Shown: positions 8,711 through 63,548 of the stretch, piece after piece | How the letters are laid out: the number at the start of each line of letters is the position of its first letter | Numbering within the stretch: position 1 is the stretch's first letter | The notes under the pieces: generated by a model | Seen by the model: only the letters and a program-made list of their open reading frames with translations | The model's database searches: none | What the model was told of the DNA's origin: nothing | Source of the DNA: Octopus bimaculoides | Lineage: Eukaryota | Direction of reading: 5' to 3' | DNA: 64,000 nt | Assembly: GCF_001194135.2 (NCBI RefSeq) | Contig: NC_068981.1 | Coordinates: 5,459,047-5,523,046 of the forward strand | Made by a program: the position numbers and the translations under genes

Positions 8711-8869
8711 CTAGAAAAGTTTGGTTCACTGTGTGAAGACAGTGTTTGGGGTGTAAGAAAAGGCTGTGCCGAGTCTTTTATGCCATTGGCATCCATATGT
8801 TCAGTAGACGTACGAAGAAATGTCCTTACCTCGTTATTTGTCAGCTTACTCTGTGATCAATCTCGCTGG
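8711..8869 (+). CDS. PPP4R1: PPP4R1 exon LEKFGSLCEDSVWGVRKGCAESF...LLCDQSRW
   Basis: ttttgcag/GTAAGA, 159 nt phase 0/0; HEAT repeat matching DNVWGVRKACAECF...DPSRW. Confidence 0.97.
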
Positions 8870-26626: not shown

Positions 26627-26788
26627 TGGAAGGTTCGACGAACTCTGGCATTCTCCATCCATAAACTTGCTGTGATTTTAGGAGAAGATATTACCCATAA
26701 AGACCTGGTTCCTGTCTTTGATGGTTTCCTTAAGGATCTAGATGAAGTTCGGATTGGAGTTTTAAAGCATCTGATGGAATTTCTTAAG
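26627..26788 (+). CDS. PPP4R1: PPP4R1 exon WKVRRTLAFSIHKLAVILG...DLDEVRIGVLKHLMEFLK
   Basis: ttttcag/GTGAGC, 162 nt; near-identical to recalled WKVRRTLAFSIHELAVILG...DLDEVRIGVLKHLHDFLK. Confidence 0.98.
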
Positions 26789-28922: not shown

Positions 28923-29043
28923 ACAATGTGAACTTTTGTCTAGTCTATTTCAAGCTGAAGAAAATAGTACATTTTTACTACCAATTGCTCTTACTTTATT
29001 AAGTGACAAAGTTGCTGAGGTCCGGTTAGCTGCTTGTGCTCTG
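28923..29043 (+). CDS. PPP4R1: PPP4R1 exon QCELLSSLF...LLPIALTLLSDKVAEVRLAACAL
   Basis: catttcag/GTGAGT, 121 nt phase 2/0; PIAL..L.DKV..VR HEAT motif. Confidence 0.95.
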
Positions 29044-29203
29044 GTGAGTTCCCACTTGTTCTATTTTCCTTCTATTGGAAATAATCTTACATAATGAAGA
29101 AAACATATCTACAAAAAAAAAAAAAAAAATCAGTGAATGTATTTCACTTGAAATATATGTTTTCAAAGGTAGATAGGCATCGACGGCTAGCAAACCAAGC
29201 TAC

Positions 29204-29246: not shown

Positions 29247-31261
29247 TGGAGGTGCTTTGTTTCCACTTTGAAAACATAGGGACACAGGAAATGTGTCAAG
29301 TCCAACAGGAAACGGTGTTTCCTAGGACTAAATAACAGTAGCATTCTTCCCTTTCATGGGACTGCCACATTAAGCTGACAGCATGCTATCACTTTATTGT
29401 GCTGCTACTGCATAAATCACTGAGATTTAGAAATATATTATTTCTATATCTAGACATAGTTTTAATTTGTGACTACTGTAGAATTGGTGTGTGTCCCCTA
29501 CCCCTTCTGAGTAGTTTTATGCCAGTGGTTTCCTTGTACAGCTTTGAGGAAAATTGAATAAAAATCACTTAGTTATTCTCTTGTAAGGTTCCTTGGCTGA
29601 ATTAGGTGAGGTTTGGGTGTGGGATAGTTTTGACTGAGAAGATTGACCAGTACACCAGAAATACCACCCTTAGAAGGGTTGGTTGTGTGTGTGTTATGGA
29701 TGCACAGTGTCTAAAGCAGTGGTTCTCAACCATTTTTTTTCGTACCTTTGATTCCCATTTTATTCTGGGGGAACCTCATAGCCATTTCCATCTTCAAAAA
29801 GGAGTTTTATAGATATTTTTCAAAATACCTATTTTCACTTATGTCAGCTTAAAGTGAAAGAAACCAAGCTGCTTCCTGCAATAAATACATCATCGTCGTT
29901 TAACATCCATCTTGCATGGGTGACAGGCAGCCAGGTAGAAAAAATACCCAAGGCTACTGTGTCTGTTTTGGCAGGGATTTTACGACTGGATGCTCTTCCT
30001 ACAGTGATATTTATGTGTGTATATCCGATGGGCTTTTCCATTGAATCTGCTAGAAAACGAATGAATAGAGAAGTTATTGTTTGGATTCTTGCTTTTGTCT
30101 GTGCCCGCTCATCAATTATTAGCTTTGTGTTCTGTCTTGTCATTGCGTCAGGCATTAGGCTGTGGCCATGCTGGGGCACTCTTGAACTTTTCGTTGAAGG
30201 AATTGACCCCAGTACTTTTTGTTTTTAAGCCTGGAACATATATCGGTTCCTTTTGCTGAACTGCTAAGTTATGCCATAAACACACCAACACAGGTTGTCA
30301 AGAGTGATGGTGGACACATATATGATGGGCTTCTTTCAGTTTCTGTCTACCGAATCCACTTACAAGGCTTTGGTTGGCCCGAGGCTATAGTAGAAGACAC
30401 TTGCCCAAGGTGCCACGCAGTGAGACTGAACCCGGAACCATGTGGTTGGGGAGCATATTCCTTACCACACATCCATGCAAAAATATATTTCTATATATTT
30501 TTACGTTTTGATTTCATTTTCAATACTGCTTTTGAGAATACAACTTTGTACAACATAAGAGATAAATGACAAATGTTTCTGTTACTATGGCAATATTGAA
30601 AATACGAAAGGAATTTAGGCAGTTTTTTTTTTATGTCTTGCAAGTACTTGGTGACCCTGTCAGTGCAGGTGCCACTTAGAAAAAGCACCCAGTCCACACT
30701 GTAAAGTGGTTGGCATTTGGAAGGGCATCCAGCTGTAAAAACTGACCTCTCCTGTGTTTGTGCCATGTAAAAAGCTTTAAGTCCACTCTGTTGAGTTGTT
30801 GGTGTTAGGAAGAGCATCCAGCTGTAAAAATCCTGCCAAAACAGACACAGTAGCCTAGAGTAGTTTTTCTACCTGGCCATCCCCATTATGCCAGCATGGG
30901 AGGTAGACATTAAACGATGATGGTGATGAATCCTTGATTTATTACCACAAAAGTTATTCATGGTATGATGTTGCCCTAAATACATTTCTTATTTTCCTCC
31001 CTTTAAAACTTCCCTCTATGTTATCAATGCGCACTCCCTTTCTGCTGCCCATACTACAAAGTAGTGTCCCTGGCAACTAACCCCACAACATTGGCCTCTA
31101 CAAGAGGCAACCATGCATCTGTGTAGTATTCTTAGCAGAGGTCTGGATATACAAAGAAACTGCACTGCTCAGTGCATGTATATCTTTCACTTGCACATAG
31201 CCATGCGCACACGTGCACGAGGAATATCTTCCAGTCTTGTATTGTTCTGTTTTTTTTACAG

Positions 31262-31374
31262 GCCAGCACCTTACTGAAACAGTTGTACAACACCAAGGAG
31301 CAATATTACCAAAGAATGGTCAATGACTTAGTGGAATGTTTTGCAACATATCCGAATTGGGTGAAACGTCAAGT
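31262..31374 (+). CDS. PPP4R1: PPP4R1 exon ASTLLKQLYNTKEQYYQRMVNDLVECFATYPNWVKRQ(V)
   Basis: tttttacag/GTAAGT, 113 nt phase 0/2; aligns to INELVENFGRCPKWSGRQ. Confidence 0.94.
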
Positions 31375-32125
31375 GTAAGTAACAGAGCCTTATCAATTTG
31401 CATTGTTTTACAGAATTCCAATATTATTAAAAAGCGACCAACTGGTGGAATCATTGGCATGCTGGACAAAATGCTTAGTGGCATCTTATCTGTGCATTCT
31501 GTTGCTCTCCTGTTTTGAGTTCAAATTCTGTTGAGGTCAGCTTTGCCATTCATCGTTTTGGGGTCAATAAAAGGAAATATACCAGTTGAACACTGGGGCT
31601 TATAAAATCAAATTAAACCCTTTCCTTGAAATTACTGGCCTAGTTCCAAAATTTGAAACCATTATTGTCGTTATTGTTATGTAACAAGATATGGCTGTGT
31701 ATTTGAGAAGTTTGTTTCCCATTCACGGCTGTGCAACCCCTTGAGCAAGTGTTTCCTACTGTCACTCCACACTAGTGAAAACCTTGTAAGCTTGGTGGAA
31801 TGGAAACTGATAGGAATCCGTTGTGTGTGCAAATGAGTGCAGGTTTGTAGTTGTAGCATTGTCTTGACACGATTTGATGCTTGTAAACAAGTTTCAGTCA
31901 GACAAGTGATGTTTGTTTCTTGTGTTCCGTGACAGATATATGTCTGGCCATGGGGAAATATTACCTTGCTTAGAAACAGGTGAGGGCTGGCGGCAAGGAA
32001 GGGTATCCAGGGGCAGAAAATTTTCCTCAGACTCCACCTGATCTATTCTGATATGGAAAATGGACGTCAGATTTAGGATTAGTTTTCAGGTGTAGGTGCG
32101 GCTGTGTGGTAAGAAGTTTGCTTTC

Positions 32126-32355: not shown

Positions 32356-32842
32356 AAGAAGTTTGCTTTCCAACCATGTGATTTTGGGTTCAGTCCCACT
32401 GCGTGGCACCTTCAGTAAGTCTTCTACTATGACCAAAGCGTTGAGTGGATTTGTAGAGGGAGACTGAAAGAAGCCTGGTGTATGTATGTGCGTGTGTGTC
32501 CGAGTCTGTGGCAAACACACCTGTTTGACAACTGCTGCTAGTGTGTTTGTGTCCCCTAACATACCGATAAGCAAAAGAGAGCATGGTTGATTTGTTTGAC
32601 TAAAATTCATCATAATATTGTCCCAACATGGCTGCAGTAAGTGAAAGAGAAAAGACAAAATTCCAAGATCCTAGTAAATGAAGGAATGGTACAGAATAGT
32701 TGAATTCCATCCAGCTAATCTACCAAAATGTTTGGTATATTGTTAGTATGAATGCCTTCATTTTAATGACTGGATTTTCAGGTTTTTCTCTGAAATGTGA
32801 AGTAAGTTATTAAAAAAGCCAAATTCCTGTTTTAATTTTTAG

Positions 32843-33003
32843 ATATGCTCACCTTTGCTGGTCAATTTTAGAAGATAATAGCATTCCTCCAGAGCGTTTT
32901 GCTGTAGATTTTCTTCCAAGTCTTCTCGACTTAGCAACAGATATCATACCTAATGTCAGAATCACTTCAAGTAAAACTCTGTCTCAATGTGTTCTTTCTG
33001 TAG
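32843..33003 (+). CDS. PPP4R1: PPP4R1 exon YAHLCWSILEDNSIPPERFAVDFLPSLLDLATDIIPNVRITSSKTLSQCVLSV
   Basis: ttttag/GTAAGT, 161 nt phase 2/1; aligns to DQFAVHLMPHLLTLANDRVPNVR. Confidence 0.96.
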
Positions 33004-33214
33004 GTAAGTTGTTTAACGATTCATCTTCATTAATTAATGCTGTTGTTGCATTTTTATGCCGTCCCATAATGTGGTAACACTTTTGTTCCTGTATTTCTGT
33101 TGCCTTTCATTCGATTAATTTTGAAAATAATGAATTTAGCCCTTCTGTTTCCAACCTGTTGCCTTTCATTCGATTAATTTTGAAAATAATGAATTTAGCC
33201 CTTCTGTTTCCAAC

Positions 33215-48167: not shown

Positions 48168-48181
48168 TCATGACAAAACAC
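48168..48181 (-). CDS. minus-strand gene probable terminal exon (C)VLS-stop
   Basis: ctttcttttacag acceptor, GT GTT TTG TCA TGA in phase 1; AATAAA on minus strand at 48158-48153. Confidence 0.6.
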
Positions 48182-48332
48182 CTGTAAAAGAAAGATGGAA
48201 TTTAGATTTCTGACATTAAATTCAATTAATGAATCTGGAGCACAAACATTTAAAAGTGGTCCCTCCAATTCTCCTTACAATTGGTCAGCCCCTATCATTG
48301 GTCATAGTGCCTATTATTCCCCATATTCCCTC

Positions 48333-48815
48333 TTAACCCTTTCGATACCAACGTGGCTGAAACTGTCTTTGGCTCTGTAGTACAAATGTCTTGTTTTCAT
48401 AAGTTTTGAATTAAAATCCTCCACCAAACCTTAGTCACAATTTATGTTCCTAACACTAGCTTAATGATAACTAAGTTATTTTACTAAATTCCTTGTTATA
48501 TTTACAATTAATTGAAAGAAACACAGAACATCTCAACAGAAATATGGTAACAAAAGGGTTAAGATCTATAATAGAGAAACAATCCTTAACCCTTTTGATA
48601 CCAACCTGGCTGAAACCAGCTCTGGCTCTGTAGTACAAATGTCTTGTTTTCATAAGTTTTGAATTAAAATCTTCCACCAAACCTTAGTCACAATTTATGT
48701 TCCTAACACTAACTTAATGATAACTAAGTTATTTTACTAAATTCTTTGTTATATTTAAAATTAATTGAAAGAAACACAGAGAATCTCAACAGAAATACAA
48801 TAATGAAAGGGTTAA
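48333..48815. mobile_element. two adjacent TTAA-flanked (piggyBac-type) MITE copies, 48333-48562 and 48586-48815
   Basis: each TTAA-CCCTTT...AAAGGG-TTAA, closely similar, 23-bp spacer. Confidence 0.85.
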
Positions 48816-48885
48816 TTGTTGCGAATCGTCATGTGACTGCCTCAACAAGCCAACCATGACCTCTAAGAAAATCAAATACTATTGG

Positions 48886-49110
48886 GTTGGTGCATAATTA
48901 TTGCAACTTTTTTCCAACAAAAACAATAACAACATGTAACAAAAACATCTTTAAATGATTATTCCAGAGCATATTCACCATCTTCTTCAATTACTGCTTC
49001 CCATTTGCTTGGCAGACGGTCAGACCATCATTTAAAGATGTTTTGTTAAATATTGTTATTGTTTTTGTTGAATAAAATTTGTTGAAAAAAAGCCACAATA
49101 ATTCTCTACA
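48886..49110 (-). mobile_element. mariner deletion derivative
   Basis: TATTGGGTTGGTGCATAATTATTGC mariner-type TIR; minus strand encodes DRLPSKWEAVIEEDGEY (mariner C-terminus); internal inverted AAACATCTTTAAATGAT. Confidence 0.7.
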
Positions 49111-49111
49111 T

Positions 49112-49680
49112 CAGATACACTACCTTGTGGTATTCGCTGCAAACCTCTTCAGTGAGGAGAATCCCAGAGCCAAACAGTTCCTTTTATTTTCTTTTGGTAC
49201 CATGGCCAGAATGTAGGACATGTCCTGCCAATTCTCTGTTCTTTGTTTTCTGTAACAATTCCTCTTTTTCCTGATATTCAAATGCCTCTTTCTTTCAACC
49301 GGTTCATCAAATGTGACATCCACATCACCCTTCTCCTTCTTCTCCTCCTCCTTTTCCCTTCAATCTTTCCAGTCATCCCTAAATGCTCCAGGCCCTCTTC
49401 CTTCGTCACATGACCAAGAAACCTCAGTCGCTTGGCCCTTTACCTCGCAAAGCAGTCTCCTACTTACTGCAGCTCGGGTCGTCACTTCTTCATTAGACAC
49501 TTTACCTGTCCATGCCAGCTTCCCAAACACCTTCTCACTTCTGATGCTATAAGTCCATGCCTCACTTCCATACATTAACACAAGGTAGACATAGCAGCTC
49601 AATATACAGATCCGTGTCTTGATGCTCAGATGGATTCTCAAGATGTAATACCAGTTCAATACTTGGGTCAATTCTTCTCT
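49112..49680 (-). mobile_element. RTE-clade non-LTR retrotransposon 3' remnant
   Basis: LSIKTRICILSCYVYLVLMYGSEAWT...WTGKVSNEEV, typical RTE ORF2 C-terminus, frameshifted. Confidence 0.85.
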
Positions 49681-50005
49681 CTCTCTCTCTCTCTTCTCCT
49701 GTCCATCTTTGTTTCTTATTTCTTTATTGACCACAAGGGGCTAAACATAGAGGGGACAAACAAAGACAGACAAAGGGGTTAAGTCGATTACATCGACCCC
49801 AGTGCGTAACAGGTATTTAATTTATCGAAGCCGAAAGGATGAAAGGCAAAGCTGACCTCAGCGGAATTTGAACTCAGAACATAGCAGAAGACAAAATATC
49901 GCTGAGCATTTCACCCAGCTCGCTGCCATCTTTGTTTTTGAATGCAAGTCTATGGTCAAGACATGCTGCTGTATGAAATGGTACTGCTTCTACAGTTCCA
50001 CTCAC

Positions 50006-50062
50006 AAGGGTAGGCCACCATCAGAGAGATCTGCCACTTCAGACCTTTATTGATTTGAAATT
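50006..50062 (-). CDS. minus-strand gene exon h: (E)FQINKGLKWQISLMVAYP
   Basis: ttgatttgcttccag acceptor, GTGAGT donor, 57 nt phase 1/1. Confidence 0.72.
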
Positions 50063-50591
50063 CTGGAAGCAAATCAAGTGTGTTTCTTGTGAGTCCAGTA
50101 TCTCAGGCACCAGCTGACCAACGCTGACTAGTGGTGTTGACCATGGACACTGACAGATAAAACAAAGAGAGACAGACTTAGTTCTATCAAAAAGCCACAA
50201 CATTATAGACATGATGTCATTGTCTGTAATGGAGGGTGGGGTGGGGTCTTTATAGTTCCATCAGTCATTGACCTGTGTTAGATATAAAATAGTGAGAACC
50301 ACCTGGGAATTGAACTCACATCATCAGGTGAATTACAGATTGTTTAGTAACATCTGGTTATAGTTCCAAGACATCAAGCTGGCTGAATTGTAAGAATTTG
50401 CAACATTTTTGTCCTCTCTTTACATTTTGAGCTCAAATTCTGTTGAGGTTGACTTTAGCTTTCATCCTTTCAGGGTCAATACATTAAACACCACATGAGC
50501 CCTGGGGATGGATGTAATCAACTTATCTTCTCCCCACCGCAAAAGTACTGGTCTTGTGCTGAAATTTGGAGCCACACCTATGGACTATTTA

Positions 50592-51009
50592 TTTGGTCTT
50601 CGCTTCAGTTTTGTTATTTTAGTTCCTTTGTCAGAGCTCTTTCCTCACACCTCCTGTGACCTCTTCAGTGACTCTCTATCCCATGTGTCTCCTTTTGTTC
50701 TACTTCCTCCATTTTGTCTTTCTGTGGTATGTATCTTTATCTGTGCATGCATTTGCGTTTTGTACCTGTGTATGTGTACATGCATGCAGATACACGCACA
50801 CACATACATATGCGCATGCATACACACACAGGTACAAACACAAATGCATGCACACATAAAGATACCACAGAAAGACAAAATGGAGGAAGTAGAACAAAAG
50901 CAGACACATGACATGGAGAGTCACTGAAGAGGTCACAGGATGTGTAAGGAAAGAGCTTTGACAAAGGAACTAAAATAATAAAAATAATAAAACTGAAGCG
51001 AAGACCAAA
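50592..51009. repeat. 418-bp foldback (long imperfect palindrome) flanked by TA
   Basis: TTTGGTCTTCGCTTCAGTTTT... mirrored by ...AAAACTGAAGCGAAGACCAAA; ~190-200-nt arms, CA/TG-rich centre. Confidence 0.88.
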
Positions 51010-51893
51010 TATGTAGTTCGTGTGTTTAATTGGTAAAATAATAATAATTTATGGCAATCAGAAACTTTCTGTTTGTTCCCAAAACAATTTGCTGAGTTTA
51101 TTTCATATGTTAAATTGGGAAAGTACATCTTCAGTTTATAATGCTGAGCTCAGTTCCTCTTGTAGCTGTGATCCCATCCAGGGGCAGATGAGTCTCTCTG
51201 ACACTATGGAAACTGAAGGACTGACCCCAGGAATGGAAGAATTTCTTCAATGGAGTACTACTTTTTAAATATCTGGATGGTTTGCAATTAACACCTTTTT
51301 ACCTTTTACTTGTTTCAGTCATTAGACTATGGCCATGCTGGGGCACCATCTTGAACAATTCTTGTTGAACAAATTGTCCTCAGTACTTATTTTCAAGTCT
51401 GGTATTTATACTATTGGTTTCTTTTGCTAAACTGCTAAGTTCAGGGGTATAAACAAACCAACACTGGTTATCAAGTGGTGTTGAGAAACAAACAGAAAGC
51501 CACAAACACACAGACATCATCATCATTTAACGTCTGTTGTCCATGCTGGTATGGATTGGACGGTTTGACCAGGGCTGGCATGCTGGAAGGCTGCACCGGG
51601 CTCCAGTCTGATTTGGCATGGTTTTTCTACAGCTGGATGCCCTTTCTAATGCCAACCACTCCGAGAGTGTAGTGGGTGCCTTTTATGTCCCACCAGCATG
51701 GGTGCCATTTATGTGACACTGGGGTGCATTTACGTGCCAATTTGCATGACACTGGTATCTGCCACGACTGCGATTTTGCTCAGTTTGATGGGTCTTCATC
51801 TCAAGCACAACATAATGCCAAAGGTCTTGGTCATTGCCTCCGTGAGCCAAAACACTCAAAAGAAACTCAGCCACTTTGCCTCCATGATGTATG

Positions 51894-51927
<34 letters not shown>

Positions 51928-52032
51928 TCATCATCATTGTCGTCATTTAAAGTCTGTTGTCCATGCAGGCATGGGTTGGATAGTTTGACTGGGCTGATAC
52001 GCTGGAAGGCTGCACCAGACTCCAGTCTGGAT

Positions 52033-52068
<36 letters not shown>

Positions 52069-52762
52069 CAGGCTTCTTTCAGTTTCCGCCTACCAAATCC
52101 ACTGAAAAGGCTTCGGTTTGCCCGAGGCTATAATAGAAGACCCTTGCCCTAGGTACCAAGCAGTAGGACTGAACACCAAACCCTGTGGCTGGGAAGCAAG
52201 CTTCTTCGCAATAGCTACATAACATTGACACAGAGTGTAGAGTTAGTTTCTTGCTCAAGGCTACAACTCAATAACATCAGTCAGACCTGAACTAGACTAA
52301 GGTTGCCAGTAGGCCATCTCCTCATCCTCAAAGCCATTTCAGCCCTGAGACAATTTGAGTTGTACAGTCCCTTATGCCCTGATCCTTCTCTCTCCCTGAA
52401 TTACATGGAGGAAATCTCGCAAAGGATTTCATCTTAGCCACCCTTGTTACCCAACCTTTTGCTCTCACTCTCTCACAACACCACAGTTTCTGGAGACAAT
52501 GGCCACACATCGAAAACATACCCCTGAAACACCCCCCATTACTTACATAACAGGGCATGGCCAATGTACCCCACCTAAACACCCCATTAGTTATATAACA
52601 TCCCCCTTGAATTACCCCCTTCACTTACCAACTGACCTTTCATGCAGTTATGATGACAAAAGAAAAATTTTTCTCAACATTTTTACTGGGATCCATTATC
52701 TTTTACTTGTTTCAGTCATTAGACTGTGGCCATGCTGGGGCAACACCTCGAAGGGTTTAGTT

Positions 52763-52946
52763 CAGTGGTTCGCGACTTTTTCACTACCAAGGACCCCTTT
52801 TATTTAAATGAGTTTTCCCACAGACCCCTTCTAATATGCTTATCCTTATGCATATATATATATGAAATCAAAATTTAATTCATGGACCCTCAGTACTACC
52901 TTTGCAGACCATCAGGGGTCCATAGACCCCAGGTTGGGAACTACTG
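52763..52946. mobile_element. hAT-type MITE (same family as 19122) nested in a SINE tail
   Basis: CAGTGGTTCGCGAC...GTTGGGAACTACTG; perfect 8-bp TSD GTTTAGTT. Confidence 0.88.
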
Positions 52947-53690
52947 GTTTAGTTGAACAAATCAACCTCAGTACATTTTACTCAAGACTGTTAAGTTACA
53001 GGAATGTAAACCCACCAACACCAGCTGTCATGTATTGGTAGGGCAGAAAGACAGACATAAAACTTCGCACACAAAGATATATATACAGACATACTAGTTT
53101 GTCTGTTGTTGTTGATGACGACCAAGGACATTATGTGTGAGAAGACGGGATATGGTGTGTTTTTTGGCTGTGGCCAATCAGTCCGATGCAGGTCGTGCAC
53201 TGGTGGTCTGTTGGAACCAAAGGCAAGGATTTAGCTGTGGACTTGGGTCGTTTGTGTTTTCTTTGTGTCCCTGCAACCCTGTTTGGTTCATAGGAGGTGA
53301 CATCTCTGTTGATGCAGCTTTGCCAGGCAGGGTGGTCTACACACACACACACAATGGTCTTCTTTTTGTTTCCATCTACCAAATCCACTCACAAGGCTTT
53401 GGTCAGCCCAAGGCTATAGCAGAAGACGCTTGCCCAAGGTGCCACGCAGTGGGACTGAACCCAGAACCATGTGATTCAGAAGCAAGCTTCTTACCACAGA
53501 GTCACACCTGTACCTATATTTTAAAAATCTGTTGTGCCAGCCAGGTTAGGATTAACTCTGTGCTTGGATTATATAAATGTGTCCCAAATCAGGAGTGAAC
53601 TACAAAATATCTTCCTCCCCAACTCCAACACCATCAACAAAACACATCAAACACCCTGCCACCATTATCACAACTAATTAATCTCCTTAC

Positions 53691-53746
53691 CAAATGTTTT
53701 TACATCTTCAGTACATTCTTGTATGGAAATTGACAAATTCTGAACC
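53691..53746 (-). CDS. minus-strand gene exon g: VQNLSISIQECTEDVKTF
   Basis: ttttcttcttctttacag acceptor, GTAAGG donor, 56 nt phase 2/1; other frames closed. Confidence 0.78.
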
Positions 53747-53918
53747 CTGTAAAGAAGAAGAAAAAAAAAAAGCAATTTAATTAAGAACAAAAAGTTCGCT
53801 TAGGATCATTAATTACAGAACAATTAAAGCACAAGTTCAGTTGGGCCACACAAAATAGTCATTTAGCTAATTATAGTTTCATAATTAGATATTATTTAAG
53901 GATTGTTTTTAAAAAAAT

Positions 53919-54338
53919 CAGTTCTATATTTAAGAGATGAGGAATTATTTACATTATTTACATTTGACAGATATTTGTCCTCATCGTGTTTGTTGTTAAC
54001 ACAGCGTTTTGATTGATATACCCTCCAGCCTTCATCAGGTATCTTGGGGAAATTTCTCATTCCTAAGGTATTTTTTGATATTATTATTATTTAGGTCACT
54101 GCCTGGAATCGAACTCGGAATCTTGGGGTTAGTAGCCTGCGCTCTTAACCACTATGCCATATGCCCATGGGAATAATAATAATCAACAACATCAAAAAAT
54201 ACTTTAGGAATGAGAACCCAGGTTCGAAATTTCCCCATGACACCTGATGAAGGCTGGAGGGTATATCAGCCGAAACATTGTGTTAACAACAAAGAAGATG
54301 AGGACAAATATCCGTCAAATGTAAATAATGTAAATAAT
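53919..54338 (-). mobile_element. tRNA-headed, hammerhead-tailed retroposon with inverted tail copy (most complete locus)
   Basis: minus-strand head 54166-54093 with A box TGGCATAGTGG and B box GAGTTCGATTCC, tail to 53919; plus-strand tail copy 54172-54338; CCCATGGG at junction 54164-54171. Confidence 0.85.
54239..54284 (+). ncRNA. minimal type I hammerhead ribozyme-like motif
   Basis: stem I GACAC/GTGTT, core CTGATGA, extra A, stem II GGCTG/CAGCC, GAAA, then C-A-T-T (ACG at this position in two other copies); activity untested. Confidence 0.65.
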
Positions 54339-55678
54339 TTTTTTAAATTGTTCAAATATTTGGTGTAGTGTACAAGTAATTTTTTCTTTTACTTGTTTTG
54401 GTCATTAGGCTGTGGCCATGCTGGGGCACCGCATCGAAGAATTTTAGTTGAGTTAATTGACCCCAGTATTTACTTTACTTTTAAGCCTGGTATTTATTCT
54501 ATCAGTCTCTTTTGCTGAACTGCAAGATTACAGGGATGCAAACACACCAACACTGGTTATTAAGCGGTAGCGGGGCAAACACAGATACAAACGCATACAT
54601 ACATGTACCCATATATGCGTGCATGTATATATATATATTATTTATATATTATTTATATATATATATGTATATCTATATGACAGGCTACTTTTAGTTTCCA
54701 TCAATCAAATCCACTCACAAGGCTTTGATCAACCCAAGGCTGTACAAGAAGACACAGCTTGATGGACTGAACCCAGAACCATGTGGTCCGGAAGCAAGCT
54801 TCTTACCCCCCAGTCAGCCTGTGCATATTGTGCATAAATTTTAGTAACAAATCTTACACGAGGCCCCAAGTGTCATATGCGCCCCCAACAGGTCAAATGG
54901 ACCTTTTGGGGGCGCATTGACCTCCTTCATGGAGTCCTTGACCCCCACATCATCCCCAGGCATGTACAAGAAAATAAATAAATAATGAAAATAATTAAGT
55001 AGATGTGCATTTATCGAACCCCCGAATAGTTCCATCGAGCCTTAGGGGTCGATATCGACTGCTTTGGAGNNNNNNNNNNNNNNNNNNNNNNNNNNNNNNN
55101 NNNNNNNNNNNNNNNNNNNNNNNNNNNNNNNNNNNNNNNNNNNNNNNNNNNNNNNNNNNNNNNNNNNNNNNNNNNNNNNNNNNNNNNNNNNNNNNNNNNN
55201 NNNNNNNNNNNNNNNNNNNNNNNNNNNNNNNNNNNNNNNNNNNNNNNNNNNNNNNNNNNNNNNNNNNNNNNNNNNNNNNNNNNNNNNNNNNNNNNNNNNN
55301 NNNNNNNNNNNNNNNNNNNNNNNNNNNNNNNNNNNNNNNNNNNNNNNNNNNNNNNNNNNNNNNNNNNNNNNNNNNNNNNNNNNNNNNNNNNNNNNNNNNN
55401 NNNNNNNNNNNNNNNNNNNNNNNNNNNNNNNNNNNNNNNNNNNNNNNNNNNNNNNNNNNNNNNNNNNNNNNNNNNNNNNNNNNNNNNNNNNNNNNNNNNN
55501 NNNNNNNNNNNNNNNNNNNNNNNNNNNNNNNNNNNNNNNNNNNNNNNNNNNNNNNNNNNNNNNNNNNNNNNNNNNNNNNNNNNNNNNNNNNNNNNNNNNN
55601 NNNNNNNNNNNNNNNNNNNNNNNNNNNNNNNNNNNNNNNNNNNNNNNNNNNNNNNNNNNNNNNNNNNNNNNNGCCCTG

Positions 55679-56190
55679 ATGCCGTACCAGGCGGTGGGTC
55701 TCATGGCTTCTGATCTTAAACTGATTGGAAGTGTTATCATGTACATATTTTGTCTTGGTATAAAAGATGGGTTTTACAGCAAGTATCCCTATCAATACCA
55801 CAGATTTGCTTGTCAGTTGTTTGACCTTAATCAGTTGAGCATGTCCCTTGGTGGCTGACAATATGTGCATCTCTGATCATGAGCAGAAGTAGTTGGGGAG
55901 CATCATAGTCATGTGTTGAGAGGAATTCTTTGGGGTTTGGATAATTCACCTTTGGAAACATGGGCGTTTTGAACAAAATGGGCTACTCAACCTGAAGAAA
56001 ATTCTAACTGGGCCCCACTTGCAAGGTCATGCGCTGTTTATCTTGATATGAGATCACCATGTCGCGCACATATGGTTGTGATGCATGTGCCTGGTGTACC
56101 CTTATCAGACGGGTAGTCATGATGGGTATAATGGGCTTCGTATACTTTTACCCGAGTGTCACTTTGGTGGCACATGCTGTTCTCTTACTC

Positions 56191-56228
<38 letters not shown>
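55679..56228 (+). mobile_element. non-coding retroposon-like 3' end with (AAT)n tail
   Basis: non-genic sequence ending in (AAT)n at ~56191-56228; family not identified. Confidence 0.4.
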
Positions 56229-56229
<1 letters not shown>

Positions 56230-57269
56230 CATCATCATCGTTTAACGTCCGCTTTCCATGCTAGCATGGGTTGGACGATTTGACTGAGGACTGGTGAACC
56301 AGATGGCTGCACCAGGCTCCAATCTGATTTGGCAGAGTTTCTACAGCTGGATGCCCTTCCTAACGCCAACCACTCCGAGAGTGTAGTGGGTGCTTTTTAC
56401 ATGCAACCGGCACAGGAGCCAGTCAGGTGGCACTGACATCCAACCATGCTCGAATGGTGCTTTTTATGTGCCACCAACATGGGTGCCCAGTGCCAAAACA
56501 AACAAGAATAGAAACATTTTTGGAGGGATTTGAAGCATCACTTTCCCATTATTGAACTTGCTTGGTTTGACTGATGTACAAATTCTTTTAATCTTTTACT
56601 TGCTTCACTCATTTGATTGCGGCCATGCTGTAGCACCACCTTTAGTTAAACAAATTGACAGCAGGACTTATTCTTTAAGCCTAGCACTTATTCTATTGGT
56701 CTCTTTTGCCGCACCACTAAGTTATGGGGACATAAACATACCAACATCGGTTGTCAAGCAATGGTGGGGGGACAAATACAGACACAAACATACGCACACA
56801 CACGCATATATATGATGGGCTTCTTTCAGTTTCCATCTATCAAATCCACTCACAAGGCTTTGGTTGGCCCCGAGGCTATCGTAGAAAACACTTGCCCAAG
56901 GTGTCACGTAGTGGGACTGAACCCAGAACCATGTGGTTGGGAAGCAAGCTTCTTACCACACTCCTGAGCCTATAATAATTATCTACAAATATGATAATAA
57001 CGATAATTGTTATTATACCTCTGTGTGTTTTGATATTAAAACTGAAAAAAAGAAATTGACCATGTTTGTAAAAAGTTTTGGGTTTGCATCCCCCTAAGCA
57101 AATTCTGTTCTTGCGCTCATGGCCCCTAACCCCTATTGTTTGCAACCAGACACACACAATTCTAAGTGTTTCAGCAAATTAGTAAAAGTATATGAGAAAG
57201 GATTAAGTAGAAGTAAAGCACTGTCTTGAGTGATAGGACTCTCAGACCGGCCAGTTACTGGTTTGCTTG

Positions 57270-57470
57270 GTATATAAGTGATCAACACCACATAATCATC
57301 CTCGAATGGAATGCAAGTCCATCGTAGGGTCGCTCGTCCACAGCAGAGAGGACTGGAACAACGAAGAAATGAAGTATTTTGCTTAAGAATACAATGCACT
57401 GCCCAGTTTGGGAATCGAAACAGCAAACTTATGATCACAAGCGCAACATTTTATCCACAAGGCCAGGCAG
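57270..57470 (-). mobile_element. further tRNA-headed SINE family (degraded)
   Basis: reverse complement has tRNA-like head followed by TTCTTAAGCAAAATACTTCATTTC...GTTCCAGTCC; relatives at 3195-3330 and 15415-15600 (+). Confidence 0.55.
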
Positions 57471-57646
57471 CTTCACAAAAGGATTACGACTAACTGGAAT
57501 GCCTTTTTGTTGATAAGAGAAGATTCATGTCAATGAGTAATGACTGACAAGACTTCTATCCGGGCAATATCGTCTGCGGAAGAAGAGATGCCACAAGGAT
57601 TGTCACGGGGAACCTCACAGCAGACCCACCCCCCACGCCCCGCTAC

Positions 57647-57750
57647 CCTTCCAGGAAATCATTTATATTCTCCCCCCCCCCGTTGCTGTCAGGAGTTGTT
57701 AACAATGTCAGGCAAGGGAGATAACTTTCTATCTGTAAATACACCAACCA
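57647..57750 (-). CDS. minus-strand gene exon f: WLVYLQIESYLPCLTLLTTPDSNGGGENINDFLE(G)
   Basis: ttccttcaatag acceptor after a long pyrimidine tract, 104 nt phase 0/2 bridging exons e and g; donor GTAGCG is weak and the frame crosses a 10-G run. Confidence 0.55.
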
Positions 57751-57770
57751 CTATTGAAGGAAAATGGAAA

Positions 57771-57985
57771 GAAGGAAAAGAAGGAAATTGAAACAGAAAA
57801 GAAGGAAAAGGAAAATGAAAAGAAAAAGAAGGAAAAGGAAAATGAAAAGAAAAAGAAGGAAAATGAAAATGAAAAGAAGGAAAATGAAAATGAAAAGAAG
57901 GAAAATGAAAAGAAAGAAAATTAAAAGAAGGAAAAGAAGGAAATTGAAACAGAAAAGAAGGAAAATGAAAATGAAAAGAAGGAAG
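57771..57985. repeat. purine-rich minisatellite built from GAAAAGAAG/GAAAAT units
   Basis: direct reading; fills most of the 240-nt intron 57751-57990 of the minus-strand gene. Confidence 0.9.
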
Positions 57986-57990
57986 CTTAC

Positions 57991-58081
57991 TTTTGATGAC
58001 TGGTATTTCTCCAAAAGGCTGCTGAAAACCTTCAGCTCACCGTTACTGGCTTGAAATATCTTTCTTTGAGTCCACACTTTT
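57991..58081 (-). CDS. minus-strand gene exon e: KVWTQRKIFQASNGELKVFSSLLEKYQSSK
   Basis: ttctcttttaactctag acceptor, GTAAGC donor, 91 nt phase 2/0. Confidence 0.8.
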
Positions 58082-58633
58082 CTAGAGTTAAAAGAGAACA
58101 AATAAATAAATACATAAATTGAAGCTAATATCAAATTGTATGGAGGAAGACCCAAACAACCCTCTCCCTTTCTTTTCTCTCTCTCTTTGCCTCTTACTAC
58201 AACTAACATGTCATTCCCCTCTTCATGTCATTATCATTTTCCTTTCTCTCCACCTCTCACTTCCACTAACCACATGGCAGCGCATCCACATTTGGCATTA
58301 ATACACAAATGATAATAATAATAATAATAATGATAATTCCCCCACCGAGCCCCCTATTTACTTACTGGTACCAACTTCATTTACTGTCTTTCTCTTTCTC
58401 TCCCTTTCCAATGCCTTCAACGAAGGCTTCTCTATGTGGTTGCTGAACCTGCTAGAAACAGCAGCCAAATGTCACTCAAATCACAACTTGTTGCCATTTA
58501 GAAAGAAGAGCATCTTACATAAGACCTCGACACACTTTATGTTAAGACATGATGGTCATGGCTGGAATACCTTTGATCACAGGTTTACACAATCAGGCTT
58601 CAACAACAACAAAATCTTGCAACTCATACTTAC

Positions 58634-58735
58634 TCCGATGCTTCCTGGAACTCCGAATAAAGTCGGATGGCATTCGGTTGGCAATGCTTTGTAATCAACT
58701 CTCCAGCTTTCTTGCAATTTTCCAAAAATCGACTC
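58634..58735 (-). CDS. minus-strand gene exon d: SRFLENCKKAGELITKHCQPNAIRLYSEFQEAS(E)
   Basis: ctgtctatttccag acceptor, GTAAGT donor, 102 nt phase 2/2. Confidence 0.85.
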
Positions 58736-59688
58736 CTGGAAATAGACAGAACATCCTTGTCAGTCGTCTCTTTTATGAATACCAAAGACAATGAGATGGT
58801 GGTGGGGAATGACAAAGAAACAAGGACAGTACTCCAGCATGGCCACAGCCAAACTGAGTGGAACTGCATAAAAAAAGTAAAAATAGAAACTGGAACGTCA
58901 ATAGAATATTACATTAGTAATTGTCCAAGACTAATTTCTAAAGAGATTCTTACCACATGGTTCCGGGTTCAGTCCCACTGCATGGCACCTTAGGCAAGTG
59001 CTTTTTACTATAGCCTCGGGCTGACCAAAGCCTTGTGAGTGGATTTGGTAGACGGAAACTGAAAGAAGCCTGTTGTGTATGTGTGTCTTTGTTTGGTGTC
59101 TGTTCCCCTCCCCACACTGCTTGACAACTGGTGCTAGAGTATCTACATCACTGTAACTTAGCGGTTGAGCAAAAAGAGACTGATAGAATTAGTACCAGGC
59201 TTTAAAAATTACAAGTAGTGGGGCCAATTCATTTGACTAAATTTCTCAAGGTGATGCTCCAGCATGACCACAGTCTAATGTCTTTTATTTTTTGTTTGTT
59301 TCAGTTTTTAGACTGTGGCCATGCTGGGGCACTACCTTGAAGAATTTTTAGTGGAATAAGTCAACCCTAAGCCTGATACTTATTCTATCAGTTTCTTTTG
59401 CTGAAATGCTAAGTCATTGGGATGTAAACACACCAACACCGGTTGTCAAGTGGTGTGAGTGGGTGTGGCAGGTAAAGACAGACAGACAGACATACATGAC
59501 AGGCTTCTTTCAGTTTCCATCTACCAGATTCACTTATAAGGCTTTGGTCAGCCCAAGGCTACCAGAGAAGACATTCGTCCTATATGCCATGCAGTGGGAC
59601 TGAACCTGGAACCATGTGAGAGGGAAGCAAGCTTCTTACCACATGGCCATGCCTGCACCCGAGGAATCCGAAAACAATGGTTGCTTAC

Positions 59689-59793
59689 TTGTCAAGTTCC
59701 TGAAACTTGTCCAGGTTGTCTCTGTTTGTGCCGTCCAAAAGGCGAGTGCTGATCTCTTGGGTATGACTCGCTAAGTTTGTGATGGTCGGGACG
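59689..59793 (-). CDS. minus-strand gene exon c: VPTITNLASHTQEISTRLLDGTNRDNLDKFQELD(K)
   Basis: tttctcttctctcgcag acceptor, GTAAGC donor, 105 nt phase 2/2; only the phase-2 frame is open; CpG-rich versus flanks. Confidence 0.85.
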
Positions 59794-60794
59794 CTGCGAG
59801 AGAAGAGAAACGATAAAAAGAGACAAAATGACAAAAAATATTCAAATAGTCATGGCTCTAATTAAACCTTGTAATTAGCAAAAAGCCAAGTGAACAAGGC
59901 AGCGTCTATGTGATCACTGGACCTGCTAAAAATAGCAGCCAGGTCTCTATGTAATCAGAGGAAAGAGGAACAGCACACTGGATAACATAGTTAGAGATGC
60001 AGCAGGTTTAAGTAATAGATGGGGTGGTCGTGGTTGGCTCTTATCACTTGTAGCTTCCCATCAGAAAGGAAATAAGGTGTAAACACACACACACATCATT
60101 GTACTCACACACACACATGCACACCAACAACAATAATAATAGCCGTCATGCCCGCATCTACTGCCACCACCACCACCATCATCATCATTCAACTGTGTGT
60201 GTGATGGGCCCCATGGAGGCAGTGACAGGTGACCAAGACCTTTGGTGATATACCATGCTTGTGTTGACCTGTCAAGCCGAGTTCGACTGTCGTCGTGGCT
60301 GATGCCAGTGTCGGGTCATTGGCACCCATGCTGGTGGCACGTCCACTACACTCTCAAAGTGGTTGGCGTTAGGAAGGGCATCCAGCTAGGGAAATCTTGC
60401 CAAATCAGATCAGAACCAAGTGCAGCCCCCCCCCCCCAGCTTAGCATTTTTCAGTCAAACTGTCCAACCTATACCAGTATTGAAAGCAGACGTTAAATGA
60501 TGATGATGATGATGATGAACTTGTTTTCCATGCTAGCATAGATTGGATGATTTGACAAGACACTGGCAAACCAGAGGGCAGCACTGGGTTCTATTGTCTG
60601 TTTTGGTATGGTTCCTTACAGCTGGATGCCCTTCCTAATGCCAACCATTTTCCAGAGTGTCTGCTGGGTGATTTATGCATGGAACCAGCACCAGTGCTAC
60701 TAACGTGCCACTGGCACAGGTGCTTTCTTCACAGGTACAGACATATTCTATTGACACAAACACACAGTCATCATTATACAAAGAGTCTCTCCGC

Positions 60795-61342
60795 AATGAT
60801 ATTTTTTGAAGACACCATCAACACCGAGAGATATTGCTCAAATATCATCTCTCCATTTGTAAGACCAACTCACTGAAAGTGAAATTAATAATGCATACTT
60901 TCAGCAAGACGGAGCTACAGCACAGATTTCATGCATCACCATGGCGCTACTTCATGAGTTTTTCGGTGAATGGATTATTTCGAAGGGACTTTGTCCAACA
61001 AGATCACCTGATTTAACACCACCAGACATTTTTTTTTTCTGGGGAGCAAGTAAAGGATCAGTGTACAAGAATCACCCGAAAACCATTAATGAGCTAAAAG
61101 ATGCAAACATAACCTTCACACAGTCCATACTGCATCAGACTCTCCAAGATGTATTTCAAACCATGTGTAGAAGATTCAACTTATGTATTGAAAATGGAAG
61201 ACGACAGCACCACACCTCTTATAAAGTTTTTGTAAAGTCTTGTAAAGTCTAATATATTCTTTTGTAGTTTTCTTATACCATCTTATAAATATTTATTTTG
61301 CAATAAAATACTGCGGAGAGATTTTCTGAACAACCTGTATTT
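60795..61342 (+). mobile_element. 5'-truncated Tc1/mariner-superfamily transposase remnant
   Basis: IFFEDTINTERY, YFQQDGATA, PTRSPDLTPPDIFFFWG...PKTINELK with frameshifts; ends GAACAACCTGTA. Confidence 0.88.
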
Positions 61343-62282
61343 TACTGTCGTTTTACGCATGCACACGCAACACAAATTGGTGGAATAGTTAGAACCTCAG
61401 ATATTGGTCCCAATCCTCTGCACTACAAGTTCAAACCACACTGAAGTTAACGTTGAAACTTTCTTACATTCACAAGCAATAAATATTGACCCACTCTCTC
61501 GCCGTCTCTCAGGAATCAGTTATGTTCAAAGCCAGACAGGAATGGCCTCCACCAGTTTTAGATGCCTAAGACACCCAGTATGTCATGATAATACTTCTAC
61601 AACTCAATCAAAAGTTCAGGACCAAATACAGGAAGGACGCACACACACACACACACACACATTCAGCTTCAAACCTATTATCATTATCATCATTAAGATC
61701 TGACAGAATCGTTAGCACACCGGGCGAAATGTCTAACGATATTTTGTCTGCCACTAAGTTCTGAGTTCAAAATCCACCGAGGTCAACTTACCCTTTCAGG
61801 GTTAACTAAGTACCAGTTATGCACTGGGGTTGATGTGATTGACTTAATCACTTCTCCCAAATTTGAGGCATTGTACTTCCAGTAGAAAGGATTATCATTA
61901 TTATTATTATTATTATTAAGGTAGTGAGCTGGTAGAATCGTTAGCACATTGGCTGAAATGTATTTTGCCCGCACAAAAGAAGCCCTACTAGTTATGTTTC
62001 TACTCAAGTGACCTTTCATGCACCTCTCCTTCCAACAAGGCCCCTCAACTGTCACGTGACATCACTGACCCTATATCACCCCCACTCCCCACACACACAC
62101 ATCATGGTCTCCCTCCTGTGTTAACGGATAACTTTGACACTCAGCCATGTGTGGCAGTTCAACACAACGCATTACCCTGCAAACCACAACAGATCACCCA
62201 CATGTTCGTCCACATGTTCAAGTTTTCTCACAACCATACAACATCTCCTGCCCCTTCTCTGTACATGCCCCATGTGACCTAC

Positions 62283-62371
62283 CAGTGATCAGATTCCATG
62301 CAACCCGTCTTCAGCCAGTAATGATTCAAGAATTCTAAATCAAAAGCCGATCTCCGCTTCTGTAAAACATC
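62283..62371 (-). CDS. minus-strand gene exon b: DVLQKRRSAFDLEFLNHYWLKTGCMESDH(C)
   Basis: long polypyrimidine tract + ttattttag, GTAGGT donor, 89 nt phase 0/2. Confidence 0.82.
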
Positions 62372-62540
62372 CTAAAATAAGTGAAAAAAAAAGAAGAAAA
62401 ATTAAAGACATTGCATAATAGATTTTATTTATTTTCTTACACACACACAAAAACAAAACACCACCACCACCACTAACAACAACAACAACAATAGCATTCT
62501 TAAGGTATATCCACATTAACTAGGATATACAGATTGCTCC

Positions 62541-62576
<36 letters not shown>

Positions 62577-63412
62577 TTAATGTCCACTTTCCATGCTGGC
62601 ATGGGTTGGACGGTTTGATTGAGGACTGGTGAGCCAGGAGGCTGTGTCAGGCTCTAATCTGAATCTGGCAATGTTTCTACAGTTGGATGCCCTTCCTAGC
62701 ACCAACCACTCCGAGAGTGTAGTGGGTGCTTGCTATGTGCCACCAGCATGGGAGCCAGTCAGGAAGCACTGGCATCGACCATGCTCGAATGGTACTTTTC
62801 ACGTGCCACCAAATGGCTTTTTACCAAGGAAAATAAAGACAATTGCCCCGACCTGTTTTACAGTTCTTTGGCCACTCATAGCCAAGGACATGTCATGCAG
62901 TTTAACTGCTTGGAATTTATCTTAGCTTTCCTACGCATTTTAATAAATATTATAAATACACACACACAGTAAATAGATGAAAATGCACAGTAAAGTTAAA
63001 ACAATTACCATAATCTCTTTAAGAAAAATTAAAAGAGAAAAACAGACAGATTTCATTTAGATATATAACATTTTTTTTACTTTGCATTTCTTAAGTGTAA
63101 ATTATAGAATCCAGTCATGGAAGGAAAACAATAAATGGCTACCACAATCGTGTACATGTCACACTGTGCTATTCAGAGGGGCAACAGATAAACTCAATAA
63201 GAATTCTGTTATTAACAAAGAATTCCAGCAACGGACAGACTAGAGGGTGGGGGTTTGTTTGCTGTAAGTCTGACTAGGAAGTTCTGTGGAAATTCATGTT
63301 GATGTTAGGTGAAATAACTTTCATCATCATCATCATCATCATTTGTCTATGCATGGCTGGGTGGTTGGGTGGATGGATATAAATATAGAAAGAAACGTGA
63401 TAAAAGCCTTAC

Positions 63413-63548
63413 TTCGATTTTAATCATTTTTGTTGTGAGTTCATTGAGTTGTGGAGAAAGGTTCCGTAGACACGTTAAAGTGTTTTTAATCCATGAAGTG
63501 TTTGCAACGGATTCACTTTGATTCAAGAAGCTTTGTTTCAGATAAGTC
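63413..63548 (-). CDS. unidentified minus-strand gene, exon a: TYLKQSFLNQSESVANTSWIKNTLTCLRNLSPQLNELTTKMIKIE
   Basis: ttttttgtttttcag acceptor, GTAAGG donor, 136 nt phase 2/0, open frame. Confidence 0.82.

What the first reader, a model, noticed from the sequence alone, without database searches (positions are those of the whole stretch)
48168..63548. Hidden nine-exon gene convergent with PPP4R1, family not recognised
Seen: nine short exons (14-136 nt) with canonical splice sites whose phases chain without a break (2-0-2-2-2-0-2-1-1) into about 250 aa: TYLKQSFLNQ...KIEDVLQKRRSAFDLEFLNHYWLKTGCMESDHCVPTITNLASHTQEISTRLLDG...ENCKKAGELITKHC...KWLVYLQIESYLPCL...KGLKWQISLMVAYPCVLS*. It looks helical and matches no family I can name; the 5' part lies beyond the window. 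Inference: an uncharacterised, possibly lineage-restricted, lipid-anchored protein.
Basis: partly seen in the sequence, partly recalled or inferred. Interest (0 to 1): 0.7.

Follow-up and report, generated by a model that had tools for sequence, protein, structure and literature searches.

The report
Octopus TBK1/IKKε-like kinase gene tail

Summary
A minus-strand gene is present.

Against the Octopus sinensis orthologue (LOC115231772) these exons are about 95% identical in DNA, versus about 87% for introns. dN/dS is 0.04.

Exon 8 (50062-50006) lies beyond the real stop. Exon 9 (48181-48168), which supplies the "CVLS" lipid-anchor box, has no support.

The N gap (55070-55672) hides a real 71-nt exon. 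Without it the last exon is out of frame.

The family is recognisable. The window encodes the scaffold/dimerisation domain (CCD1) of a TBK1/IKK-epsilon-like kinase.
- In O. sinensis the exons just upstream encode a full TBK1 ubiquitin-like domain (Pfam E=1e-25) and the end of a kinase domain.
- A 673-aa cephalopod-like relative has the kinase, ULD and this domain.
- hhalign to canonical TBK1 SDDs gives 95.8% probability.
- The top 20 Foldseek hits are all TBK1.

This is ordinary biology and an annotation gap, not a new family.

The parts
63413..63548 (-). Coding exon, 136 nt (TYLKQSFLNQ...KMIKIE), early part of the scaffold/dimerisation domain. It is the first exon of the gene inside the window.
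   Evidence: AG/GT sites. 95.6% nt identity to L001 9639-9774. tblastn to P0001 residues 58-102. The phmmer alignment of the re-spliced orthologue to human TBK1 runs into this exon.
62283..62371 (-). Coding exon, 89 nt (DVLQKRRSAFDLEFLNHYWLKTGCMESDH)
   Evidence: AG/GT sites. The protein is 100% identical to P0001 103-131. 95.5% nt identity.
59689..59793 (-). Coding exon, 105 nt (CVPTITNLASHTQEISTRLLDGTNRDNLDKFQELDK)
   Evidence: 47% identical to P0002 529-566.
58634..58735 (-). Coding exon, 102 nt (SRFLENCKKAGELITKHCQPNAIRLYSEFQEASE). This is the most conserved SDD motif and aligns to TBK1 '[33 protein letters not shown]'.
   Evidence: It also matches Owenia TBK1 (P0003) 613-653.
57991..58081 (-). 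Coding exon, 91 nt (KVWTQRKIFQASNGELKVFSSLLEKYQSSK), ending in phase 0
55070..55672 (.). Assembly gap that most likely hides a 71-nt coding exon, orthologous to O. sinensis FTKDLNKEMFHDNNEDLIFHMMK(R)
   Evidence: The exon is present at L001 19033-19103 with cag/gtaaat sites. It is absent from all read letters of the window. Synteny blocks end at 56808 and resume at 55069. The last exon is in frame only if a 3n+2 exon intervenes.
53674..53746 (-). Terminal coding exon ((R)VQNLSISIQECTEDVKTFGKEIN, stop TAG at 53676-53674)
   Evidence: tblastn to P0001 255-278, 95.8% identity. 95.8% nt identity to L001. The O. sinensis model also ends in this exon, two codons later.

Best explanation
Window positions 63548-53674 (minus strand) hold the 3' half of an octopus gene for an IKK-related kinase of the TBK1/IKK-epsilon family.

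The six readable exons, plus one hidden in the N gap, encode most of the all-helical scaffold/dimerisation domain (SDD, Pfam 'TBK1_CCD1') and a short C-terminal helix. The start of the SDD, the ubiquitin-like domain and the kinase domain lie beyond the window's right end.

By analogy with solved TBK1 structures (established knowledge, not tested here), this helical bundle forms the spine of a constitutive dimer and packs against the ULD and kinase domain. It holds the two active sites apart, so that activation needs trans-autophosphorylation of the activation-loop serine between clustered dimers. The active kinase then phosphorylates IRF/NF-kB-pathway substrates downstream of pattern-recognition receptors.

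Shown here: the exon structure, purifying selection, orthology to O. sinensis LOC115231772, and homology of the encoded domain to the TBK1 SDD.

Inferred: that the window's own gene carries the kinase and ULD exons upstream; dimerisation; the immune-signalling role.
For: 1. Orthologue. O. sinensis LOC115231772 is the only word-index hit, at 93% identity. It matches the window exon by exon, with dN/dS 0.04 over 197 codons.

2. Upstream exons on the O. sinensis contig. Two properly spliced exons lie directly upstream of the annotated start. They encode the end of a kinase domain and a complete TBK1_ULD (PF18396, E=1e-25, 89.8 bits against a gathering score of 31, profile positions 1-86 of 88). 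The re-spliced 401-aa protein hits only TBK1 chains in the PDB (E=4e-18). That alignment runs through the ULD into the first window exon.

3. Exhaustive HMMER search. It found just two other relatives.
- P0002 (673 aa) scores E=4e-45 and is 38% identical over residues 399-669. It has Pkinase plus TBK1_ULD and matches human TBK1 at E=2e-128. It is encoded without introns on 2.2-2.4 kb Logan contigs from at least 5 sequencing runs.
- P0003 is Owenia TBK1 (E=8.6e-4). Its CCD1 scores E=1.5e-34 and it matches human TBK1 at E=3e-149.

4. Profile comparison. The cephalopod SDDs against the human and Owenia TBK1 SDDs give hhalign probability 95.8%, E=8e-9, over 198 columns.

5. Structure. The AF2 model is all-helical. 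Its top 20 Foldseek PDB hits are all TBK1 (TMq 0.46-0.58, about 250 columns); BAR domains and IKK-beta follow.

6. Pfam. TBK1_CCD1 is the best Pfam hit for the window peptide itself, though below threshold.

7. Literature. Molluscs, including the squid Euprymna, are reported to have TBK1 and IKK-epsilon genes with KD-ULD-CCD1 architecture (PMC10844198, PMC9879056, PMC6685332).
Against: - The Pfam CCD1 score is below the curated cut-off for the window peptide and for the orthologue (17.3-19.3 bits against 25.9).
- A profile of the three cephalopod SDDs alone finds no TBK1 chain in the PDB by sequence.
- The AF2 model has low confidence (pLDDT 53), so the Foldseek ranking is supportive rather than decisive.
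- The kinase and ULD exons of the window's own gene are outside the window and were not seen.
- The O. sinensis RefSeq model starts only at the end of the ULD exon.
- No RNA-seq of this species was available to confirm the junctions.
Confidence: 0.9

Rival explanations
1. One reading: a nine-exon gene for a novel, lineage-restricted helical protein that ends in a CaaX box (CVLS) and is lipid-anchored.
For: The chain can be rebuilt with canonical AG/GT sites and unbroken phases. The sequence at exon 8 is 93% identical in O. sinensis.
Against: - Exon 6 carries a 1-bp indel and is only 84% identical in O. sinensis.
- Exon 8 lies 2.3 kb past the orthologue's stop.
- 2,802 open AG..GT segments are available by chance in that 10 kb.
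- The family is TBK1/IKK-epsilon.
- The related transcript P0002 also ends a few codons after the homologous RVQ motif.
Confidence: 0.02
2. A kinase-less short paralogue. The gene really encodes only an SDD protein (about 280 aa, as annotated in O. sinensis) or a ULD-SDD protein. Such a protein would act as a decoy or dominant-negative partner of full-length TBK1-like kinases.
For: The RefSeq model LOC115231772 is 280 aa and starts at a Met at the end of the ULD exon. No kinase exons for residues 1-275 were found on the 26-kb O. sinensis contig.
Against: - In-frame, correctly spliced exons for the kinase C-lobe end and the whole ULD lie directly upstream of that Met.
- The closest relative, P0002, is a full KD-ULD-SDD transcript with intact HRD, DFG and activation-loop Ser motifs.
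Confidence: 0.06
3. A decaying pseudogene copy of a TBK1-like gene. On this reading the missing exon is truly deleted rather than hidden.
For: One exon is absent from the read sequence. A repeat-like insert (55673-56208) abuts the gap. The stop falls two codons earlier than in O. sinensis.
Against: - dN/dS is 0.04, with 26 synonymous against 5 non-synonymous changes.
- All twelve splice sites of the six readable exons are intact.
- The last exon stays 22/23 identical in the frame that requires the missing exon.
- The expected position of the exon falls within or at the edge of the N run.
Confidence: 0.02

Closest known systems
Vertebrate TBK1 (and IKK-epsilon); solved structures 4IM0, 4IWO, 4JL9, 6NT9
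   Same: - Collinear KD-ULD-SDD architecture in the orthologue and the relative.
- The window peptide aligns to the TBK1 SDD by profile-profile comparison and by fold.
- The conserved motif KF(Q/D/E)xxxK..L...(C/A)KKA...T..C is shared.
   Different: - The SDD sequence is very diverged: about 14-18% identity, with Pfam CCD1 below threshold.
- The protein ends about 45 residues after the CCD1-aligned region, so the roughly 70-aa C-terminal adaptor-binding domain of TBK1 seems absent or reduced to one helix. This is an inference from lengths, not a test.
Molluscan/annelid TBK1/IKK-epsilon homologues (scallop CfIKK3, oyster TBK1/IKK-epsilon group, Euprymna TBK1 and IKK-epsilon, Owenia CAH1784808.1 = P0003)
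   Same: Same family and the same KD-ULD-CCD1 layout (PMC9879056, PMC6685332, PMC10844198). P0003 is hit directly by the octopus protein.
   Different: Owenia TBK1 has a canonical CCD1 (E=1.5e-34) and a 110-aa tail. The octopus/P0002 clade has a fast-evolving SDD and a short tail.
Octopus sinensis LOC115231772 ('uncharacterized protein', 280 aa)
   Same: It is the orthologue, with 192/197 identical residues over the shared exons and identical exon boundaries.
   Different: The database model is 5'-truncated and unnamed. The window's copy stops two codons earlier (TAG instead of GAG), and its penultimate exon lies in an assembly gap.

Membership tests
TBK1/IKK-epsilon (IKK-related kinases) | N-terminal Ser/Thr protein kinase domain with an activation-loop serine (TBK1 S172) | not testable with these tools
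   The domain lies beyond the window end (>64000). Indirect evidence only: the O. sinensis contig has the last kinase-domain exon (L001 4775-4951, 58% identical to P0002 276-337). The relative P0002 has Pkinase at E=7.6e-43 and the motifs HRDIKPGN, DFGAAR and FVSLYGTEEYLHPDMY.
TBK1/IKK-epsilon (IKK-related kinases) | TBK1-type ubiquitin-like domain (PF18396) between the kinase domain and the helical domain | tested here: met
   Met in the orthologue, not in the window itself. The re-spliced O. sinensis protein scores E=1e-25, 89.8 bits against a gathering score of 31, over profile positions 1-86 of 88. Its PDB hits are only TBK1, at E=4e-18.
TBK1/IKK-epsilon (IKK-related kinases) | Scaffold/dimerisation domain homologous to TBK1 CCD1 (an elongated helical bundle) | tested here: met
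   - hhalign of the cephalopod SDDs (window peptide as the first row) against the human and Owenia TBK1 SDDs: probability 95.8%, E=8.3e-9, 198 columns.
- phmmer hit to Owenia TBK1 at E=8.6e-4 in a library of 1.84 billion proteins.
- Foldseek top 20 all TBK1, from a low-confidence model.
TBK1/IKK-epsilon (IKK-related kinases) | Pfam TBK1_CCD1 (PF18394) at or above the curated gathering score | tested here: not met
   17.3 bits for the window peptide and 17.8-19.3 bits for the orthologue, against a cut-off of 25.9. It is nevertheless the best Pfam hit each time. P0002 is also below threshold (20.9 bits).
TBK1/IKK-epsilon (IKK-related kinases) | C-terminal adaptor-binding domain (TANK/NAP1/SINTBAD/optineurin-binding coiled coil) | tested here: inconclusive
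   The proteins end soon after the SDD: window ...GKEIN*, O. sinensis ...KEINEL*, and P0002 at 673 aa. A final predicted helix (P0001 245-279) could be a remnant. No profile for this domain was available to test.
CaaX-prenylated (lipid-anchored) proteins | A Cys-a-a-X box at the true C-terminus of the translated product | tested here: not met
   CVLS arises only from the unsupported 14-nt exon 48181-48168 joined to the unsupported exon 50062-50006. The conserved reading frame stops at 53674 with ...GKEIN.
   Joined plus-strand ORF pieces between 8636 and about 36600 give HEAT (E=2.5e-15) and PPP2R1A-like_HEAT (32.2 bits against a gathering score of 27). They also hit PP2A PR65 chains at E=6e-18. 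Assigning them to PPP4R1 rather than PPP2R1 rests on my memory of PPP4R1 motifs, not on a test.

The most novel reading that the evidence does not exclude
The octopus/P0002 clade may be a cephalopod-specific, fast-evolving branch of IKK-related kinases. Its dimerisation domain has drifted below Pfam recognition, and it has lost the C-terminal adaptor-binding domain. That would imply a different way of recruiting the kinase to upstream sensors than the TANK/NAP1/optineurin route of vertebrate TBK1. An alternative is that octopus uses the locus to make a kinase-less SDD-only regulator.
Probability: 0.25. Interest if true: 0.35.

Novelty: new member of a known kind. Interest (0 to 1): 0.15.

Why it matters
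The value is mainly for annotation.
- The locus appears to have no protein model in the window's genome. No window-encoded protein came back from the database search.
- In O. sinensis it carries a 5'-truncated, unnamed model. It should be named a TBK1/IKK-epsilon-like kinase.
- The case shows that an assembly gap can swallow a short exon, and that a phase-compatible decoy exon can then be found by eye.

Biologically, the gene adds one IKK-related kinase to the cephalopod innate-immune repertoire. That repertoire is of interest for squid-Vibrio symbiosis and for antiviral signalling in an interferon-less lineage, but the gene is not a new kind of gene.

Tried and rejected
- Two of the three word-index protein searches returned nothing: P0002 residues 305-673 and Owenia TBK1 residues 320-700. 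I therefore could not collect other cephalopod or molluscan paralogues, or build a tree to tell whether this is the canonical copy or a divergent second copy.
- phmmer of P0001 against the PDB gave only weak coiled-coil noise from the PI3K p85 inter-SH2 domain (E about 0.3).
- A 3-sequence profile of the cephalopod SDDs against the PDB gave no TBK1 hit.
The accepted job, with 4 sequences, gave only pLDDT 53.
I rejected this because the O. sinensis sequence has a frameshifting indel and intron-level identity there.
- I looked for the hidden exon elsewhere in the window by tblastn and by short-word blastn. Only its flanking ATT microsatellite matches.
- The species of the Logan runs (SRR27666058 and others) that carry P0002 could not be determined.
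Full report
**What is in the sequence**

The window has the look of an octopus genome: about 38% GC, with many SINE-like and microsatellite repeats.

It has nine exons: 63548-63413, 62371-62283, 59793-59689, 58735-58634, 58081-57991, 57750-57704, 53746-53691, 50062-50006 and 48181-48168. All are bounded by AG/GT, with the stated phases. Together they make 697 nt, or 231 aa, ending ...AYPCVLS*.

**Which exons are real**

The only hit in the 5.8-billion-protein word-index search is Octopus sinensis 'uncharacterized protein LOC115231772' (P0001, 280 aa; 93% identity, E=1e-106). No window-encoded protein was returned, so the window's own genome seems to have no model here.

tblastn of P0001 on the window, and DNA synteny with its 25,955-bp contig L001, give the following picture.
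They are ungapped and 92-96% identical in DNA, whereas the surrounding introns are about 87% identical.
- Over 197 shared codons there are 26 synonymous and 5 non-synonymous differences: dS 0.26, dN 0.011, dN/dS 0.04. This is a gene under strong purifying selection, not a chance chain.
- After exon 5, the orthologue continues with FTKDLNKEMFHDNNEDLIFHMMK and then RVQNLSISIQECTEDVKTLGKEINEL*. The latter is the window's 53746-53674 ((R)VQNLSISIQECTEDVKTFGKEIN*, stop TAG).

**The gap**

The exon FTKDL...HMMK is 71 nt in O. sinensis (L001 19033-19103, cag|...|gtaaat). It has no match anywhere in the read letters of the window, by tblastn or by short-word blastn.

- Collinear alignment with L001 stops at window 56808 (= L001 17604) and resumes at window 55069 (= L001 19690).
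- The exon lies 587 bp from that second anchor, about the nominal gap length of 603 bp.
- The readable stretch 55673-56208 is a repeat-like insert. It matches another part of L001 in the opposite orientation.
- Exon 5 ends in phase 0, and the last exon needs two bases from its predecessor. A direct join gives ...SSKGSEFVNFHTRMY*.

A 3n+2 exon is therefore required, and the gap is where it should be. In O. sinensis the same stretch is 84% identical, with 7 gap positions including a 1-bp insertion inside the 'exon'.

Exon 9 has no testable counterpart, because the contig ends first. In the 10 kb after exon 5 there are 2,802 AG..GT segments of 14-136 nt with an open frame, so unbroken phases are not evidence there. 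The CVLS box, and with it the 'lipid anchor', falls.

**What the gene is**

Pfam's best hit for the window peptide is TBK1_CCD1, but below threshold (E=0.0037, 17.3 bits against 25.9). It is the same for P0001. The decisive evidence comes from four sources.

*1. Upstream exons in O. sinensis.* Directly upstream of the annotated Met of LOC115231772, and in the same exon, the frame stays open. With one further exon (L001 4775-4951), and with proper splice sites, it encodes the end of a kinase domain and a complete TBK1 ubiquitin-like domain. That domain scores PF18396 E=1e-25, 89.8 bits against a gathering score of 31, over profile positions 1-86 of 88. The re-spliced 401-aa protein hits nothing in the PDB except TBK1 (E=4e-18). 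The alignment runs from the kinase end through the ULD into TYLKQSFLNQ..., the first exon of the window. The RefSeq model is therefore 5'-truncated, on a short contig.

*2. Exhaustive HMMER search.* The search of 1.84 billion representative proteins found only two other proteins.
- P0002 is 673 aa (E=4e-45, 38% identical over its residues 399-669). It has Pkinase plus TBK1_ULD and matches human TBK1 at E=2e-128. It is encoded on intron-free 2.2-2.4 kb Logan contigs from several runs (SRR27666058 and others), which I take to be transcripts.
- P0003 is the annelid Owenia TBK1 (E=8.6e-4). It has a canonical CCD1 (E=1.5e-34) and matches human TBK1 at E=3e-149.

*3. Profile-profile comparison.* The window, O. 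sinensis and P0002 SDDs, compared with the human and Owenia TBK1 SDDs, give probability 95.8%, E=8e-9, over 198 columns.

*4. Structure.* An AlphaFold2 model of P0001 is all-helical but of low confidence (pLDDT 53). Even so, its 20 best Foldseek matches in the PDB are all TBK1 (TMq 0.46-0.58 over about 250 columns), ahead of BAR domains and the IKK-beta SDD.

Negative results: the SDD alone, as a single sequence or as a 3-sequence profile, does not reach TBK1 in the PDB by sequence. This part of the protein is strongly diverged.

**How it most likely works**

What follows is inference from established TBK1 structural biology (PDB 4IM0, 4IWO, 4JL9).
- The window encodes most of the helical scaffold/dimerisation domain, which forms the spine of a constitutive homodimer.
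- That domain packs against the ULD and the kinase domain and keeps the two active sites apart.
- Activation therefore requires trans-autophosphorylation between dimers clustered on upstream adaptors. The active kinase then phosphorylates IRF/NF-kB-pathway substrates.

Molluscan family members with the same KD-ULD-CCD1 layout interact with MyD88 and MAVS and respond to immune challenge (PMC9879056, PMC6685332). The squid Euprymna has both TBK1 and IKK-epsilon transcripts, and TBK1 is induced by symbiont colonisation (PMC10844198).

One real difference stands out. The octopus protein and P0002 end about 45 residues after the CCD1-aligned region, so the vertebrate C-terminal adaptor-binding domain seems missing or reduced to one helix. 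I could not test this further.

**Surroundings**

On the plus strand, ORF pieces between 8636 and about 36600 form a PP2A-A-like HEAT-repeat protein. Pfam gives HEAT at E=2.5e-15 and PPP2R1A-like_HEAT at 32.2 bits. PDB PR65 chains are hit at E=6e-18. Motifs such as WKVRRTLAFSIHKLAVILG...DEVRIGVLKHL look to me, from memory, like PPP4R1. The two genes are tail-to-tail, with about 17 kb between the last HEAT-gene piece and the kinase gene's stop.

**Verdict**

On the interpretation, the gene stands, but 'unrecognised family', 'lineage-restricted' and 'lipid-anchored' do not. This is a new, poorly annotated member of a well-known kinase family. Interest is low.

Noticed in passing
window 8636-36600, + strand (pieces at 8636-8884, 14316-15257, 23641-23925, 26615-26830, 28885-29091, 31136-31375, 32814-33074, 36434-~36600): A multi-exon PP2A-A-like HEAT-repeat gene, probably PPP4R1, convergent with the kinase gene. 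Pfam gives HEAT and PPP2R1A-like_HEAT, and PDB PR65 is hit at E=6e-18. It includes one unusually long exon of 314 codons, rich in Ser, Glu, Gln and Pro.
   Followed up: partly
L001 (O. sinensis VCDQ01000250.1) 4775-4951 and 6362-6565: The RefSeq model LOC115231772 ('uncharacterized protein', 280 aa) is 5'-truncated. Two unannotated upstream exons encode the end of a kinase domain and a full TBK1 ULD. The gene deserves the name TBK1/IKK-epsilon-like.
   Followed up: yes
window 50584-51017: A large inverted repeat: 140-nt arms that are 89% complementary, an outer 46-nt pair, and a 95-nt TG/CA-rich centre. It is conserved at the syntenic place in O. sinensis (L001 22505-22938). It may be a MITE-like element or a hairpin, downstream of the kinase gene's stop.
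   Followed up: partly
window 55673-56208: The stretch abutting the assembly gap is 80% identical to L001 15592-16147 in the opposite orientation, which is a different intron of the same gene. It looks like a dispersed repeat inserted next to an (ATT)n microsatellite. That may be why the assembly broke here.
   Followed up: partly
P0004 vs P0002 (Logan contigs): The relative has a second isoform (683 aa) that diverges exactly at the junction homologous to hidden exon / last exon (…VNLIQ|RVQTAT… versus …VNLIQ|SFLTNS…). This suggests alternative 3' exon use or intron retention in this family.
   Followed up: no
window 53674-53676: The window's stop (TAG) is two codons earlier than in O. sinensis, where the same position reads GAG TTG TGA (…KEINEL*).
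   Followed up: yes
window 57760-57985, minus strand: The intron after exon 5 begins with about 220 nt of a degenerate tandem repeat (ttccttcttttcattttcatt…), seen. The same stretch aligns poorly with O. sinensis.
   Followed up: no
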